Shown here in pieces: positions 18,181 to 55,980 of a DNA stretch of 64,000 nt (position 1 is its first letter; every line of letters starts with the position of its first letter). A program made the position numbers and the translations under genes. Below the pieces are notes generated by a model. The model was not told where the DNA came from, ran no database searches, and saw only the letters and a program-made list of their open reading frames with translations. Origin of the DNA: Vicugna vicugna (taxonomy: Eukaryota); NCBI GenBank assembly GCA_013265495.1, contig MU062841.1, positions 2,914,001 to 2,978,000 on the forward strand, read 5' to 3'.

Positions 18181-19482
18181 AGAAGAGGCAGAAGGGAATA
18201 GGTGGGAGGGAGGAAGGGACGCCAGATGTCTCTGTGGTTTCAACATTTGAAATGCATCGCCCATCCAACAAAATTAAATTAGACACATGCAAATATGAGG
18301 AAAACATATCTGAAAACTGTCAGTGAATTGGATCCTCGTGTTTACCACTTTGGGCTTCCGAAATGCCCTCTCCTTGCTTAGCTGGAACAGGTGGAGGGGA
18401 GCAGGGTTCCTCTCTACCTTCACCTGCCTGGGTCTCCATGAATAGGCATTAGAAGACATTTGGTAAGATACTGGGAGAAGTAGATCTCCCCATGTTCCTC
18501 CCATAATCAAAGAGGTCTCTAGAGCTGATTTAATTTCCTGGGCTGAGGGAGTGTGCCTTTGAACAAAGTAATTTCATAGAGGGAGGTTTAAAATCTCACT
18601 GAAAGTTCCTAGTTGATAACAGCAATTTATCAAGCACTTATTATGTGCCAGAAACGATTGCAAGTACTATTTATAGACAGTAAAACAGCCTCATAATGCT
18701 GGAAGTGGGCCTCAAAACTTGCCAAGAAAGAAGGGTCATGCTATTTGGATGTGAATCAAAATGATTGGGGTGAGAGCCTACTGTTTAAGAGTGGAGCCAG
18801 TTCATCACCAATTGTGTTATATGTAATTTTCTTTACTGTCGGGCACATTATTGCAAAGCTTCACCGTTTTATCCATGTAATGTTCACAATGACACTGACG
18901 GCTGCCCACTCAGCACTCATTCCTGGATTCTTCCTTGGGAACAGGGAGTTGATTTTGTTTGGATTCTCCAGAGAGTTAATGGTATCGTCAGCTGACAGGC
19001 AAACCCTGATTTGTCTAAAATCACTGGGAAAGCACATCCCTTTCACAGGTGATTAGTTTAGCCCCAGGTGTGTGACGCACATCTGGATAACATAACGGCA
19101 GAGGAGAGGGTGCTGGGGCCTTCTGAGAAAGGTTTCCTTGCTGTTAAAAAGTGAAACTCAGAGAAAGGCAGGCTCTTCCTCACAGGGACACTTTTCCGTG
19201 TCTACAGGACCTCAAGAACAACTCAGGCATCTTGGGCATCTTGCCATTGGATGACGAGTAGCCTGAGGCTGAAACGCCCCCTGAAGCCTGCCTCCCTGTG
19301 GAATTCTTATTACAAAGTGTAAGAAATCTATGTTGCAGAAGCCACTAGAGTGGGTCGCCTGTTACAGCCCAAAGCATCCAATCTGACACAGACTCTGTGA
19401 ATTAGAACCGACTGTAACCCTCAATGCATAGACGAGGCATCTGAAGCACAGGGAAACTGATGAACTTTAAGATAGAACTTAC

Positions 19483-30705: not shown

Positions 30706-31036
30706 CTGCAGAAAGAAAAATGCCAGAAAGAAAGAATCAAGTCAGACACTAAAAATGGTCATAACAGGAACCAAAGTGCCTGTCTCACCCTTAGGCTCTG
30801 TGATCAAATATGCCAGTAAATTCGAAAGACCAACCAAGACAATGTCGGTTATTTTGCCCTTATCCACTGACTTTACCACCTAGCCCCTTTTTAAGGTTCA
30901 ACTTTAACACAGCATCTTGGAAGTCAGACAAAAAACTCAGTCCGAGGTTTTCTGGAGGTACCACTCAGAGGCAGAGTACCAGGATGGGCGGACCATTGGT
31001 CCAGGGGCCTCCAGCTGAGCCTCTGTGATTACGTAC

Positions 31037-31217
31037 CCTATGCCCGAGATGAGTCTGCAGAAGAGAAAGGATCCGTATCCCTGTACGAAGGAGGAGAGGG
31101 AGGCGAAGGAGGCATTGACAGCCAGGGACATGCTGAGGACTCTCTTCCTCCCCAGTTTATCAGCCAGGCCCCCCAGGACGAAGGCTCCCCCCATCATTCC
31201 TAGGTAGACTATCAGCC
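31037..31217 (-). CDS. SV2B: SV2B exon 3, 181 nt
   Basis: CACAG|GG CTG ATA...: LIVYLGMMGGAFVLGGLADKLGRKRVL...CRLISGIG, containing the MFS motif A (GGLADKLGRK). Donor GG|GTACGT. Confidence 0.98.
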
Positions 31218-31985
31218 CTGTGAGGAGGGGACAGAGAGAGGAAAAGGTGGAGAGAGAAGACAGGAAATTAGGAACCACGCTATGGTTTAGAAAATCCGAT
31301 GCCCACTTTTAATGCATCCTAGAAATTCCATGTCACAGACATAAAAGGTGGAATGTGACAGATGTTGGTGCAAATTAGAAGTGCTGAACAAATGTGACTT
31401 CTTAGGAATGCTATTCAAAAAAAAAATAGCTCCCCCCACCCAGGCTTACACATATGTACACATACTAAAATAGATCCACCATAGCTGGGTTTGCTGTACC
31501 CTTTCTTAAACCCTACTCGTTTAGATGAGTAATCCGCAGATGAGAGAAATGCTGTTGTTTTATTTTTAAGCCAAAAAAAAAAGCATTTATGCTATAAAAG
31601 TCCTTACCGGTGGGGTTAGGTTTAAAGAGAAATTTTCCAGGGGAAAGTGTGGCAAAGTGGGCATGGGGAACATTGGGAAGGGAAAAAATGGTGCGAGTGA
31701 AAACAATTGCCAACAAGATGGCTTATATATTTAAACACCCAAGAAGGGCTTTTTCCAAGCCACAACCAGTGTTCAGATTTCTTAGGGAAATATGGAAGAG
31801 GGTAGCAATGAGCTGTCCTTCCTTCAACACATGTAACCCCTATGTGCCTCAGAATAAAATCAGTTAATTTAAGATAGCATATACATATATGGTTGTAGAC
31901 ACATTTATGGCTGGTATTCCAATGAAAGCCAGCATCCTCATAGAGGGGGAACACTTTCAGAAACACATGGATAATTCTTTCCTAG

Positions 31986-32419
31986 TGTGAAGGAAAAGCC
32001 GGGCTGGGCTAACAAGCTAACTCACAAATCTGAGTGTAACAAGTGTCGGATCACTGATCTGAGTTCTGCTGGGCTAACTCGTAAATCTCAGTTAATAAGT
32101 GTCAGTTTGCTGATTATGTTCATGTTTTTTTTTTTTTGCTAGCCAGCTGGATTTTCAAAGAGACATATCTGGCCTTGAAATGTTGGTTTGCTGCCTCCCT
32201 GCCCCCACTTTTGTGATCATGATGCTGCTAAAGCTGTTCCATGCCTTTTGGCCAAATACCCCAAGCTTGTAATTAACCCTATAAAACCTCACGCACACGT
32301 CTTGGAGGGGCTCAGAGCTCCGGAGCAGAAGCCCCTCTGAGCCCGCCGGCGTAATACATCTGAGTACTCCAACCCTCCGAGTGGTGCTTGTTTCTTGCTG
32401 GCCTGTCATTTCCGTAACA
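31986..32419 (+). mobile_element. ERV1-class solo LTR, 434 bp, antisense to SV2B
   Basis: TGTGAAGG...CCGTAACA. Flanks ctag/ctac (4-bp TSD, 1 mismatch). U3 direct repeats (gctgggctaac...aagtgtc twice), TATAAAA at 32280, R hairpin gggctcagag/ctctgagccc (32308-32344), degenerate poly(A) signal AATACA at 32353. Confidence 0.8.
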
Positions 32420-32435
32420 CTACTAAATACTGAGT

Positions 32436-32650
32436 ACTTAACTAATTAGCAATGACTGTGCTAAGTGAACACATTATTGACTAAACCACGAAGGAAATTC
32501 TGGAGAACGTCTTTCACGTGGTGAAAATATTAAATACAAATTAGGTAAGTATCCTTTTGCTCAGCCTTGAGGGTAAATCAAATGATGAACACAAACTGCC
32601 TTTCACAGAAAGGAAGCTTCTCCCCTCCTGTGGATGCTTGGTTCACGCAG
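32436..32650 (+). repeat. Left arm of a perfect 215-bp inverted repeat
   Basis: Base-by-base reverse complement of 33685-33899 with no mismatch found. Confidence 0.97.
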
Positions 32651-32949
32651 ATGTGAGCTAGGAAGGGTGCGCGTGAAGCCAAGAGCTTCATTCACTGCTT
32701 AATCAACTTGAAGGTAGATCCCCGAAGGGAGAAATTTAACTACACTCTGCTGGATCTTCCCCGTGGCAGGTTTCTTTCTCTTGTTATTTTATTCCAGGAG
32801 ATGAAAAGAAATGATACCTTTGGTGTTGTCAACAGCTTTCCCTCACGTGTGTTGTCATGTTTTACCTCTGCGTTGCTCAAAGTCATGAAATGTGTTTATT
32901 TACTTTTTCTTCTTTGTATATGATGTCACTTCATGAAATATCCTTATGA

Positions 32950-33300
32950 GGCTACAAGCATTTATTAAGCGCCTGTTACTAGATAAGTGCTATTTTCGTT
33001 ACAAGGATACAGAGGGGTACAAACACAGTAAATCCCTTTCTTCGTGGAGCTTACATTCTAGTTGGGGAAAGGGGATAATACGTAAGTGAGTAAAATATAC
33101 AGTAAGTGGGTTGCTGATAAGTGATACAGAGAAAAATAACACAGAGGCAGGGAAAGAGAGTGTCAGGTGGGAGGTGACAGCTCTAGATAAGATGGTTCGG
33201 GGAGCCCTCAGGAAAATGGGACAGTAGGACAAAGAGCTGCAGAGAGCCCAGCATGGGGCCATCTAGGGGAAACTGCTGACCCTGTGCTCCTGGACACACG
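32950..33300 (-). mobile_element. L2a-like 3' fragment inside the inverted-repeat spacer
   Basis: taagcgcctgttactagataagtgct...ggagcttacattctagttggggaaag...gataagtgatacagagaaaaataa matches antisense L2. Confidence 0.75.
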
Positions 33301-33684
33301 TGGAGGGCACACAGAGAAGTGACAGAGTGAGGCTCAGAATCCACTGTTTACCAGTTTTCCAGCCCGCAGCTCAGAAAACGCAGTGAGCAGTTGCCCACTA
33401 CGTAAGTGTCACTGACACTTGTGTTTGAGAAAGTGAGTCTAGGCTTACAAACCCAACGCAGGCCTGGGTCATGCTATATTGTAATGACATGAGAGTCAGT
33501 GTTCCCTGCTAGACTGTGAGTTCATCTGTCTGATCCAGCCCTGACCAGCTGGGGGCTTTCAGCATCTGGTTCCCAGCAGACCTCATCCTGCCTGGTTCTT
33601 AGCCACTAAGTGTATGTCTAGCAGGACTCTTCTTTCTCCCTTTCTCCCCTTCTCACACTCCCTTTCTCACTCCCTTTCTCACTC

Positions 33685-33899
33685 CTGCGTGAACCAAGCA
33701 TCCACAGGAGGGGAGAAGCTTCCTTTCTGTGAAAGGCAGTTTGTGTTCATCATTTGATTTACCCTCAAGGCTGAGCAAAAGGATACTTACCTAATTTGTA
33801 TTTAATATTTTCACCACGTGAAAGACGTTCTCCAGAATTTCCTTCGTGGTTTAGTCAATAATGTGTTCACTTAGCACAGTCATTGCTAATTAGTTAAGT
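33685..33899 (-). repeat. Right arm of a perfect 215-bp inverted repeat
   Basis: Reverse complement of 32436-32650. Spacer is 32651-33684 (1034 bp). Confidence 0.97.
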
Positions 33900-35650
33900 G
33901 ATGAGGATATCTTAAAATCGTCTTCTGCTGCCATGACCCAGCTCCAGCAAGGATGAATTTGCTTAGGTGCTGGGTGAGCCCCAGGCTGCAGCTCCTCTGA
34001 TTCTCACCTGGTGGTGCCATGCACATGACTGGCTTTGTGCCCAGTCCTGAGAGTCTGGTCCCCACGCTAGTTTCCTACCAGCATCTGATGCCCCAACCAA
34101 TTGGAAAGTCCCAAACTCTGCCCATGCCCAACCAGGACTGGATTCTACTCTCTCAGACCTAGACAGCTCACCTAACACCATGCCACGGGCAGAAGCCCCA
34201 CATCTGAGAGGCCCTCCCTTCCTCCGCACTCCCAGATGGGCCCCTGGGAGGTCACCACCACCCCTCTCACACTGGAGTTTTCCACAATTCCTTATACTTG
34301 GTCATTTAGACTTCCAGATCAGAGCAAGAGAGAACTCTTTTTTCTTTTTTCCAAGTTCGGTCTGTTCCACTTCCAACTGCTGTTAGCCTCCACTTAGAAC
34401 CACTCCTTGCCGAGAATTTCCAACTCTCCATTCAGCCAACGAATGCCTTGTGCTTCTCTCGTGATACCTGGTCAACAAACATTTGGAATAAAGAACCTGA
34501 TGCTGAAAAGAAGGAAGGGAGTGAGGGATGTCCTGAGCGAACTGCAGATTCATGAGGAAAGTAAAGGCGACAGTGGCTGTAAGCCACCGAGTTACACAGC
34601 AGTAAACAATGGGGCAGTAAGTGCCAAACAAACTTGGGAGCCTGATGTATCCTGTAACAGCAGCAAAAGAGCCAGCACAGAGTGAGCACTTGCCACTAGG
34701 CAGCCCCCACACCAAGCACTTCACAGGCATTGCTCACCCCATGTAATGCTCCCAGCAACCTGTAACGGAGACACTGTTACCGCGCCTGCCTTATACAGAA
34801 GGAAACCGATCTGCAGAGAGAGAAAGTCGCTCCCCAAGGTCACACAACTGATGAAAATATCAAGGTTTAGAACCAGTAACTCTGACCTCAGAGCCCATGC
34901 TTTAACTCCTAGACTTGACTGCTCTTTAGAGATAAGCACTGGTCAGACTTCGTAGCTCTGTGTCAGTTCATCCTTTCTTCATTTGCTCACCCCCAGGACT
35001 GCTTGCTATGTGGGGCATGGTTTCTTCCGTTCAAGGAGAGAAACAACAAAACCAGTGATTATCTCCTGGTGAGAAAGAGTGCTCCAGTCCAAGTATTTAT
35101 CGGGCATTATAAAAACACAGAGAAGGAGCAGAGCTTGGATACGCCTCACCCAACATGGGAAGGCTTCCAAGAGAAAGACATTGAGCTGCTGTTGAAGGAC
35201 AAAGAGAAGTTAGTCAGGTCTTCATCTGGGTGGTGGGGGTGTATCACAGGCAGGTGCAGATAGCACGGACAAAAATGGGGAGGTGAAAAGAACGCCTGAT
35301 GTGTCGGGCAACGGCCAGCCAAGTAGTTCAGTGCGAGAAGAGCACCGTGCACGTGGGGGACCTGGTGAGGGACTGGGGCTGGAGATCAGGACAGAGACCA
35401 GGTTGTAAATGGCTCAGAGCCTGAAAAAGAGAGAGAGCGCGCGTGCACGTGTATGAGTGCAAGCATATGTGGCATCTGCATGTGTGTGGGCCTATGAATT
35501 CGGAGGAGGAGGGGAAGAGGAGAATTAGAGGAATGGTGAGGAGATGAGCTAAGAACCAGTCCATACACTCCATACCCAGTCCCACCCCAGACAAAAACAC
35601 TAGCATCCTACGCAAGTGCTTTTTTTTCCTGACTTCAATGAAGCTATCTT

Positions 35651-55272: not shown

Positions 55273-55529
55273 TTGGAAAAAAGAACTTAGGAGTCAGATC
55301 TGGTAGAAATCCAAGCTCCGATACCTACTAGCTATGTAAACCTAGGCCTATTAAATTCTCTGAGATAAAAATACCTTAATGACAAAATGGATTTAAATGA
55401 TAGTGTTGCAAGGACACTGTGATAGATTTAAGATGCCCAACACTGACAGGTGCTATCCAATTTTTACTGCTCTTTCTCCTTCACATTTTAATGCCACAAA
55501 GAGAACGATCTTTGAAAATTTCCACTTAC

Positions 55530-55980
55530 CAAGCATTCCCTTCTTGGAACTGGACAGACACATGTCCTTCTCTGCACTGGGCAGGGCAAAACTCACCACG
55601 AACACTTCCACCCCATCTGCCATGAGGGCCAAGCCCAAAACAAAAAAGAGAATCCACTGGAAGCGCCCGTGGCCACACTCATCAATGATGGTCTCGTACT
55701 GGTGGGCCAGCTGCTCCTCATCTTCCATCCTCTCCGCCATCAGGTCTTCCTGGCCCCGAAGACCATCTGCCCTGGAGGGCGCCATCTTGGTTGGCTTGGT
55801 CTTGATGTCATCCGGGTGAGGGATGCCCTGGTACTCGCCCTCGTAGATCTCGTCCTCCTCGTCATGGCCTTCTGTAACATCACTCTGTGCATCTTCTTCT
55901 GGATTGGACTCATTTCCACGATAATAGCCATCACTGGGGCCATAGCCCTCATAGTGGTCCTGATATTTGTAGTCATCCAT
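55530..55980 (-). CDS. SV2B: SV2B coding exon 1 (exon 2), 451 nt, aa 1-151: acidic cytosolic N-terminus and TM1
   Basis: ATG at 55980 (ggaATGG). MDDYKYQDHYEGY...DAQSDVTEGHDEEDEIYEGEYQG...GHGRFQWILFFVLGLALMADGVEVF...KKGMLG. Donor G|GTAAGT at 55529. Confidence 0.98.

What the first reader, a model, noticed from the sequence alone, without database searches (positions are those of the whole stretch)
32436..33899. Perfect 215-bp inverted repeat of apparently non-repetitive DNA around a 1034-bp spacer in SV2B intron 2
32436-32650 is the exact reverse complement of 33685-33899 (215/215 by manual comparison), whereas the old repeats in the window are visibly diverged. I do not recognise the arms as a transposon, and I see no TIR/TSD pattern of a DNA transposon; the spacer holds old L2 sequence. 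Options: (a) a very recent inverted duplication by replication template switching; (b) an older pair homogenised by intrachromatid gene conversion, making the 1-kb spacer a recurrently flipping inversion; (c) a short-read mis-assembly. If real, SV2B pre-mRNA forms a 215-bp perfect duplex 1.2 kb upstream of exon 3. That would be a strong ADAR substrate in neurons, a potential siRNA/dsRNA-sensor ligand, and a structure that loops out 1 kb of intron. The left arm starts only 16 bp after the solo LTR.
Basis: partly seen in the sequence, partly recalled or inferred. Interest (0 to 1): 0.8.

Follow-up and report, generated by a model that had tools for sequence, protein, structure and literature searches.

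The report
Young inverted duplication in camel SV2B intron
A 215-base piece of an SV2B intron was copied backwards and inserted 1 kb away in the Old World camel lineage; the copy is real DNA and one animal still carries a chromosome without it, so it looks like an ordinary scar of faulty DNA copying or repair, and any effect on the RNA is untested.

Summary
32436-32650 is the exact reverse complement of 33685-33899 (215/215), and it is the only high-identity repeat in the window.

It is not a mis-assembly. In four independent camel DNA runs the arm is its own 215-bp contig at about twice single-copy depth, and one run shows all four junction contigs. It is not a multi-copy element: no other copy at 85% identity or more appears in those runs, and there is no TSD or TIR.

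The direction of the event is resolved. Contigs of a relative about 4.5% diverged (probably a New World camelid) run straight through both ends of the left arm. They join the spacer to the right flank through a single 12-nt CT-rich unit, with no right arm. One camel run is heterozygous for the same empty site.

So the right arm, plus about 43 bp of CT-rich tandem units, is a derived insertion that is still polymorphic. A 6-nt microhomology (CTCACA, 11/14 homeology) lies at the switch point. This fits a one-step template switch or snap-back repair synthesis (four-point type 3-2-1-4).

Perfect identity needs no gene conversion, because zero differences in 215 bp allows any age up to about 3-7 My. 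The dsRNA/ADAR idea and spacer flipping could not be tested. The scan noted similar local inverted duplications elsewhere in this genome.

The parts
32436..32650 (+). Left arm. This is the ancestral source segment of the duplication.
   Evidence: Contigs of the ~4.5% diverged relative cross both of its boundaries without a break: 32395-32554, 32399-32566, 32534-32760, 32610-32975 and 32518-32818. It matches the right arm 215/215.
32651..33629 (+). Spacer. This is ancestral intron sequence in its ancestral orientation and includes the core of an old interspersed repeat at about 33030-33068.
   Evidence: The relative's 1088-bp contig covers 32780-33613 and continues into the right flank in the same orientation. 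In the camel runs a 1095-bp contig covers 32621-33714.
32652..32657 (+). Microhomology next to the source arm: TGTGAG, whose reverse complement CTCACA also ends the ancestral target site.
   Evidence: Local alignment of the ancestral target against the reverse complement of the spacer start gives 11/14 matches, including CTCACA at 6/6. About 1% of random 20-mers from the window score as well.
33630..33684 (+). CT-rich tandem units at the inner junction. The camel allele with the repeat has 55 nt here, including two exact copies of CCCTTTCTCACT. The empty alleles have a single 12-nt unit.
   Evidence: The heterozygous run X9 has CCTTTCTCACAC between 33629 and 33899. The relative has CCTTACTCACAC. 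The unit structure was worked out.
33685..33899 (-). Right arm. This is the derived inverted copy of 32436-32650 and is still polymorphic.
   Evidence: It is absent from the relative's contig (joint 33613 to 33899). It is also absent from one haplotype of X9 (joint 33629 to 33899 at depth 5.8, against the filled junction contig at depth 4.9). It is present at 2x arm depth in X1, X2, X6 and X4.
33785..33792 (-). Consensus 5' splice-site octamer AGGTAAGT, placed on the SV2B sense strand by the inverted copy. In the predicted hairpin it would be paired.
   Evidence: Motif scan. The same octamer is on the + strand at 32543 in the left arm.
31986..32419 (+). Solo LTR (TG...CA), a high-copy element that ends 16 bp before the left arm. 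It is context only and not part of the duplication.
   Evidence: Summed word depth is about 10^4-10^5, and the loose ends of other copies fall at 31986 and 32419.
31033..31230 (-). SV2B coding exon (residues ~147-212), the next exon downstream of the repeat in transcript sense.
   Evidence: phmmer against PDB: SV2B 8uo8_A residues 147-212, E 1e-29, a better match than SV2A.
55522..55980 (-). SV2B first coding exon (residues 1 to ~150). It defines the ~24-kb intron that holds the repeat.
   Evidence: phmmer against PDB: SV2B 8uo8_A residues 1-153, E 5e-93.

Best explanation
The repeat is a genuine germline structural variant of Old World camels. The 215 bp at 32436-32650 were copied once, in reverse-complement orientation, and inserted about 1 kb away, between ...CTCACAC and TGATGAGG of the ancestral intron. 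About 43 extra bases of CT-rich tandem units came with it at the inner junction, and no ancestral sequence was lost.

The most likely mechanism is a single switch-and-return of a growing DNA 3' end. An end finishing in ...CTCAC(A) left its template. It annealed to the complementary GTGAG just inside the source arm, either on the other strand at a replication fork or on its own resected strand by snap-back at a break. It was extended for 215 nt and then returned to the original site with 1 nt of shared sequence. In the four-point template-switch model this is type 3-2-1-4, which creates an inverted repeat.

What is shown: the copy is real, it is derived, it is polymorphic and it is two-copy. 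What is inferred: the polymerase-level mechanism. By default the variant is neutral. In carriers the SV2B pre-mRNA is predicted to fold into a 215-bp perfect duplex with a 1-kb loop inside one intron. That duplex would be expected to be deaminated by ADAR and removed with the intron, but this was not tested.
For: The repeat is exact at 215/215.

The contig graphs of X1, X2, X6 and X4 match a true two-copy inverted repeat. The arm contig is exactly 215 bp, at depths of 24.9 vs 13, 21.3 vs 11, 56 vs 23 and 66.7 vs 30-36. The 1095-bp spacer contig overlaps the arm at both ends. X4 has both outer junction contigs, 32395-32465 and 33870 onward.

The empty site is seen in a ~4.5% diverged relative, whose differences are of all substitution types and so reflect species divergence rather than editing. 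There the joint runs from 33613 to 33899 with one 12-nt unit between, and the left arm is crossed by unbroken contigs.

The same empty site is heterozygous in X9, at depth 5.8 against 4.9, and is linked to 33941 G>C and 33962 C>G.

No other contig at 85-90% identity or more lies on the arm, so it is not a repeat family. No Rfam family matches.

The microhomology CTCACA, 11/14 in register at the switch point, has P of about 0.01. Tandem re-copying of the target unit at the junction is typical of serial slippage.

The product matches the inverted-repeat-creating type of the four-point model (PMC5453318) and the MMBIR templated-insertion signature, which is an inverted copy of a nearby template flanked by microhomology (PMC8421209).
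Against: The inner junction is not a clean single switch. Two mismatched bases (TC where AT is expected) separate the 5-nt match from the perfect arm, and the CT-rich units need extra slippage steps or later microsatellite change.

The outer junction shares only 1 nt.

The 215-nt copy and the ~1-kb distance are well beyond the tens of bases, within about 100 bp, for which short template switches and MMB-TIs have been catalogued.

The polymorphism rests on one heterozygous run kept as contigs at about 10x. In that run the arm contig runs on into the right flank, whereas a branch would be expected at the arm's outer end. I attribute this to graph simplification at low depth.

The identity of the relative and of organisms A-D is coded, so their taxonomic spread is inferred.
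Confidence: 0.8

Rival explanations
1. An older inverted pair is kept identical by intrachromatid gene conversion, and the 1-kb spacer flips recurrently by recombination between the arms.
For: The arms are identical in every camel run examined, because each collapses into one 215-bp contig. A 215-bp perfect inverted repeat is in principle long enough for homologous exchange (general knowledge).
Against: The right arm is absent in the diverged relative and in one camel haplotype, so the pair is not old. Zero differences in 215 bp is expected by chance for any age up to about 3-7 My. In X9 the last base of the right arm differs (33899 T>A), so homogenisation is not complete. The window's spacer orientation is the ancestral one. 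Flipping itself was not testable, because k=31 graphs are blind to orientation.
Confidence: 0.06
2. The derived allele has a function, or is under selection, through the RNA. It could form a neuron-expressed 215-bp intronic duplex that recruits ADAR, changes SV2B splicing kinetics, masks or exposes the new sense-strand donor AGGTAAGT, or yields small RNAs.
For: The predicted fold pairs the full 215 bp (MFE -731 kcal/mol for 1496 nt). The derived allele looks frequent: 4 of 5 animals appear homozygous, one is heterozygous, and the reference carries it. The copy places a consensus donor on the sense strand.
Against: There are no RNA data from carriers. The only RNA runs holding this stretch belong to the relative without the repeat. 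Both arms lie in one intron 1.2 kb from the nearest exon, and intronic duplexes are normally removed with the intron (general knowledge). High frequency is also expected under drift. The scan lists several similar inverted duplications elsewhere in this genome, which suggests a mutational class rather than a selected device.
Confidence: 0.08
3. Assembly artefact: a fold-back or chimeric read was built into the reference.
For: None was found beyond the prior that perfect inverted repeats can be artefacts.
Against: Five independent DNA runs from at least four studies reproduce the arm at 2x depth together with the junction contigs.
Confidence: 0.01
4. The arms are the terminal inverted repeats of a young DNA transposon or MITE, or the copy is an L1-mediated retrocopy.
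For: The geometry (inverted arms around about 1 kb) superficially resembles a non-autonomous DNA transposon.
Against: The arm is two-copy in the camel genome, with no other contigs at 85-90% identity or more. The left arm and the spacer are in place in the relative without the right arm, so the unit never moved as a whole. There is no target-site duplication and no poly-A at the insertion.
Confidence: 0.01

Closest known systems
Template-switch mutations, four-point model type 3-2-1-4 / 1-4-3-2 (Loytynoja & Goldman 2017, PMC5453318). Later work shows that such events create RNA hairpins and new miRNA stems (PMC8794818; bioRxiv 10.1101/2023.04.19.537475).
   Same: [quoted passage not shown] This creates a perfect inverted repeat in one step. 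The ancestral state is recoverable from an outgroup.
   Different: The copied fragment here is 215 nt and lies about 1 kb from its source, whereas catalogued events involve tens of bases within the same short neighbourhood. The junction also carries extra tandem units, which implies more than one slippage.
MMBIR/FoSTeS templated insertions (MMB-TI signature, PMC8421209) and snap-back synthesis in synthesis-dependent MMEJ by polymerase theta (PMC2943611, PMC5728401).
   Same: An inverted copy of a nearby template is flanked by microhomology, with imperfect, re-copied sequence at the junction and no loss of flanking DNA.
   Different: Those signatures are defined for insertions of about 10 nt up to read length, with templates within about 100 bp. 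This is a germline, population-level allele with a longer copy and a more distant template. The enzyme involved cannot be identified from sequence.
Intronic inverted SINE/Alu pairs as ADAR substrates (general knowledge).
   Same: Two inverted copies in one pre-mRNA intron are predicted to form a long intramolecular duplex.
   Different: The arms here are unique sequence and perfectly matched, not diverged repeat-family members. No editing data exist for this locus.

Membership tests
Template-switch / templated inverted insertion (four-point 3-2-1-4; MMB-TI-like) | The inserted fragment is the reverse complement of nearby sequence on the same chromosome. | tested here: met
   215/215 reverse-complement identity, with the source 1034 bp away.
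Template-switch / templated inverted insertion (four-point 3-2-1-4; MMB-TI-like) | The ancestral allele lacks the insert and keeps the source. | tested here: met
   The empty site is present in the ~4.5% diverged relative and in one X9 haplotype. In the relative the left arm is continuous with both of its flanks.
Template-switch / templated inverted insertion (four-point 3-2-1-4; MMB-TI-like) | Microhomology at the switch points. | tested here: inconclusive
   At the inner switch, CTCACA matches 6/6 within an 11/14 homeology, P about 0.01, but it is offset from the perfect arm by 2 mismatched nt. The outer switch shares only 1 nt.
Template-switch / templated inverted insertion (four-point 3-2-1-4; MMB-TI-like) | A single switch-and-return explains the whole change. 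| tested here: not met
   About 43 nt of tandem CT-rich units at 33630-33684 need additional slippage or later expansion. The event is therefore template-switch-like, not a textbook single four-point event.
DNA transposon / MITE | Multiple genomic copies, terminal inverted repeats bounding a mobile unit, and a target-site duplication. | tested here: not met
   The arm contig is at 2x single-copy depth and no other contigs at 85% identity or more lie on it. There is no TSD. The unit is not inserted as a whole in the relative.
L1-mediated retrocopy | A poly-A tail and a TSD at the insertion. | tested here: not met
   Neither is present at 33630-33905.
ADAR-edited intronic dsRNA | Clustered A-to-G changes in RNA (T>C on the plus strand here) over both arms, relative to the same animal's DNA. 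| not testable with these tools
   The RNA runs holding the stretch are from the relative without the repeat and are kept as contigs.
Inversion-prone inverted repeat (NAHR flip) | Both spacer orientations are found in a population. | not testable with these tools
   All DNA runs are kept as k=31 contigs, whose graph is identical for both orientations.

The most novel reading that the evidence does not exclude
The allele is more than a scar. In carriers, the neuronal SV2B pre-mRNA carries a perfect 215-bp duplex that is heavily edited and measurably alters intron 2 processing, for instance through the sense-strand consensus donor that the copy introduced. Alternatively, the arms drive recurrent inversion of the 1-kb spacer. 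With carrier and non-carrier chromosomes segregating, camels would then offer a natural allelic series for testing what a long perfect intronic duplex does in vivo. A related possibility is that this is one member of an unusually common class in this genome: inverted copies of about 50-700 bp placed about 1 kb from their source, reflecting a fork-scale switching process.
Probability: 0.1. Interest if true: 0.55.

Novelty: new member of a known kind. Interest (0 to 1): 0.3.

Why it matters
This is a clean natural example of a large local template switch, with all the pieces needed to read the event. The source, the copy, both junctions, the ancestral empty site in an outgroup and a surviving empty allele in the population are all in hand.

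It shows that the process which creates short hairpins also works at the scale of about 200 nt over about 1 kb. That scale lies outside the range searched by current template-switch and MMB-TI callers.

It also corrects a tempting inference: a perfect 215-bp repeat needs neither extreme youth nor gene conversion.

For SV2B itself nothing indicates a consequence. The segregating presence/absence alleles would nevertheless make a direct test of intronic dsRNA effects easy.

Tried and rejected
- **RNA editing test.** The RNA-run search returned only weak holders (0.06-0.16 of words). When laid, these proved to be a ~4.5% diverged relative without the right arm, with substitutions of all types. 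They say nothing about ADAR editing of the duplex, although they gave the outgroup state.
- **Metagenome scans.** Exact-pattern scans for the empty-site junction and for an arm 30-mer found nothing.
- **Rfam.** A scan of 31800-34300 at E up to 1 gave only a chance-level miRNA hit outside the repeat.
- **Spacer orientation and flipping.** This cannot be read from k=31 contigs, and no raw-read or long-read DNA run was offered.
- **Depth to the right of 33941.** It is zero in all runs. This is the tool's filter for human-like contigs, not a deletion, because X4 covers the region.
- **Provirus leader idea.** I considered whether the LTR plus the arm could be a provirus leader (PBS and splice donor). 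I rejected it: no PBS-like sequence follows the LTR.
This could not be checked because no repeat library was available. Only a short, widely repeated core at 33030-33068 was seen.

Full report
**1. The observation**

The two stretches 32436-32650 and 33685-33899 are exact reverse complements, 215 of 215. The repeat finder extends the pair to 239 nt at 96%. The register plot shows an abrupt end at the outer boundaries. At the inner boundaries there are two mismatches, then a 5-nt match, then noise.

A self-comparison of the whole window finds no other pair above 80% identity. The repeat is therefore unique in 64 kb and far beyond chance. The four N runs are all more than 10 kb away.

**2. The setting**

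SV2B lies on the minus strand.
- The ORF at 55453-55980 matches SV2B residues 1-153 (PDB 8uo8, E 5e-93).
- The ORF piece at 31033-31230 matches residues 147-212 (E 1e-29, better than SV2A).

The stretch 31986-32419 (TG...CA) is a high-copy LTR. Its summed word depth is 10^4-10^5, and the other copies' flanks break off at exactly those two positions. The left arm starts 16 bp after it.

**3. Is it real DNA?**

Twenty DNA runs under four coded organism labels and nine studies hold 0.80-0.92 of the stretch's words. All are kept as k=31 contigs. In such a graph a true inverted repeat has a specific signature:
- the arm is a separate node at double depth;
- the spacer node overlaps that same arm node at both of its ends;
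- there are two different outer flanks.

Exactly this is seen. The table gives arm depth against flank depth.

| Run | Organism label | Arm contig | Arm depth | Flank depth |
|---|---|---|---|---|
| X1 | A | 215 bp | 24.9 | ~13 |
| X2 | B | 215 bp | 21.3 | ~11 |
| X6 | C | 215 bp | 56.2 | ~23 |
| X4 | B (another study) | 215 bp | 66.7 | 30-36 |

In each of these runs a 1095-bp contig covers 32621-33714. X4 also shows both outer junction contigs, 32395-32465 and 33870-34100+.

Mis-assembly is excluded. No other contig at 85-90% identity or more lies on the arm in any run, so the arm is a two-copy sequence and not a repeat family.

**4. Which arm is the copy?**

The 'RNA' runs X25, X26 and X27 (three studies) hold contigs that differ from the window by about 4.5% (99 of 2199 positions). 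Every kind of substitution is represented. This is species divergence, not editing. At the cited Camelini-Lamini split of about 16.3 Ma (PMC12337305), it fits a New World camelid. That identification is an inference, because the labels do not name a host.

In these contigs the left arm is continuous with both of its flanks (32395-32554, 32399-32566, 32534-32760, 32610-32975, 32518-32818). One 1088-bp contig runs from 32780 to 33613 and then straight on at 33899. The letters between are the end of the spacer plus a single 12-nt unit, CCTTACTCACAC. The relative thus has the source, the spacer in the same orientation and an empty target site.

The same empty site is found in a camel. In X9 (organism D), the contig that ends at 33629 splits into two branches:
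- a branch at depth 4.9 that enters the right arm (33600-33714);
- a branch at depth 5.8 that joins 33629 to 33899 through CCTTTCTCACAC. This branch carries 33941 G>C and 33962 C>G.

The two depths add up to the local single-copy depth of about 10. X9 is therefore heterozygous for presence and absence of the right arm.

Hence the right arm, together with the enlarged CT-rich block at 33630-33684, is derived. It arose after the split from the relative and is not fixed. A precise deletion that restored the outgroup's structure is much less likely than retention of the ancestral allele.

**5. The junctions**

The ancestral target reads ...AGGACTC-CCTTTCTCACAC-T-GATGAGG. In the derived allele the copy ends ...TTAAGT and is followed by GATGAGG. 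Nothing was lost, and one T is shared at the outer junction.

At the inner junction the copy is preceded by two exact units of CCCTTTCTCACT plus more degenerate CT-rich sequence. The reverse complement of the sequence just inside the source arm (32651-32670) aligns in register with the ancestral target at 11 of 14 positions, ending in CTCACA at 6/6. About 1% of random 20-mers from the window score as well.

A 3' end finishing in CTCAC(A) could therefore anneal next to the source and be extended through it. Two discordant bases (TC for AT) lie between that match and the perfect arm.

There is no target-site duplication, no poly-A and no terminal inverted repeat other than the arms themselves.

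**6. Mechanism**

The product is what the four-point template-switch model calls type 3-2-1-4. The strand leaves at point 1, copies 2 to 3 in reverse complement from upstream sequence and returns at 4 next to 1, creating an inverted repeat (PMC5453318). It also has the MMBIR templated-insertion signature: an inverted copy of a nearby template flanked by microhomology (PMC8421209).

An equivalent route is snap-back synthesis at a resected double-strand break (SD-MMEJ; PMC2943611, PMC5728401). There the 3' tail folds back about 1 kb on its own strand, primes on GTGAG, copies 215 nt and is then joined to the other end.

Sequence alone cannot separate the replicative and the repair versions. The repeated target units point to several abortive slippages before the productive switch, or to later microsatellite change. 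The size (215 nt) and distance (1 kb) exceed what the published callers search for.

**7. Age, and the gene-conversion idea**

With no difference in 215 paired positions, the 95% upper bound on age is 3.2-7.0 My for rates of 2.2-1.0 x 10^-9 per site per year. Perfect identity is therefore uninformative and needs no homogenisation.

The derived allele sits on haplotypes that differ at 32983, 33478 and 33640, and it occurs under all four organism labels. It is therefore not brand new.

The empty allele still segregates. Gene flow among Camelus species is documented (PMC12337305). The spread across labels could thus reflect either shared ancestry or introgression.

In X9 the last base of the right arm differs (33899 T>A), which is a first divergence between the arms.

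**8. What it does**

Folding the minus-strand RNA of 32420-33915 pairs the full 215 bp around the 1-kb loop (MFE -731 kcal/mol). That result is trivial given the sequence.

From general knowledge of ADAR, a long perfect nuclear duplex would be edited promiscuously. An intron-internal duplex should be degraded with the intron and is unlikely to reach cytoplasmic sensors.

No RNA from a carrier could be examined. My default reading is a neutral scar (about 0.8). A measurable RNA-level effect gets about 0.1.

**9. Comparison and novelty**

This is a new, well-resolved member of a known kind of mutation. The scan's own notes list other local inverted duplications in this genome: SPG7 209 bp, NOTCH1 150 bp, ZHX2 ~500 bp, GALNT14 ~0.7 kb, a 92-bp pair, and a 54-bp palindrome in SMOC2. 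Follow-ups there also reached 'repair scar' verdicts. I did not test those notes. They suggest that the class is common here, which argues against a special role for this one.

**10. Caveats**

- The polymorphism rests on one run at about 10x, kept as contigs.
- In that run the arm contig continues into the right flank where a branch would be expected. I attribute this to clipping of the 76-bp left junction node.
- Organism names are coded.
- Spacer orientation in the population is unknown.

Noticed in passing
window 32543-32550 (+) and 33785-33792 (-): The arm contains the consensus 5' splice-site octamer AGGTAAGT. The inverted copy puts it on the SV2B sense strand. Only one other sense-strand copy exists in the 64 kb, at 19477. 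In the predicted hairpin it would be paired with a U1-5'-end-like AUACUUACCU.
   Followed up: partly
window 33027-33029: All five camel DNA runs and the diverged relative have an extra C after 33027 and an A instead of T at 33029. The window carries either a private allele or a small assembly error here.
   Followed up: no
window 32399-32566: The relative's contigs differ from the window at only 2 of 168 positions here, against 4.5% elsewhere (binomial P about 0.017). This may be a conserved patch covering the end of the LTR and the first 130 bp of the source arm, or it may be chance.
   Followed up: partly
window 31986-32419: This solo LTR (TG...CA) belongs to a very abundant family, with summed contig depth of 10^4-10^5. 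The relative's contig begins inside its 3' end next to the same flank, so the insertion predates the split from that relative.
   Followed up: partly
window 33030-33068: A short segment of the spacer matches many unrelated contigs at 85-90% identity in both the camel and the relative. It is the core of an old interspersed repeat. The family could not be named without a repeat library.
   Followed up: no
window 33899, 33941, 33962: In run X9 the haplotype with the insertion has A at 33899, the last base of the right arm. The empty haplotype carries 33941 C and 33962 G. These are useful markers for phasing the two alleles.
   Followed up: no
other windows of this genome (scan notes): Several other local inverted duplications of 50-700 bp, mostly spanning about 1.3-1.6 kb, are noted in introns of SPG7, METRNL, NOTCH1, ZHX2 and GALNT14. 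They may form a common mutational class worth a genome-wide count.
   Followed up: no
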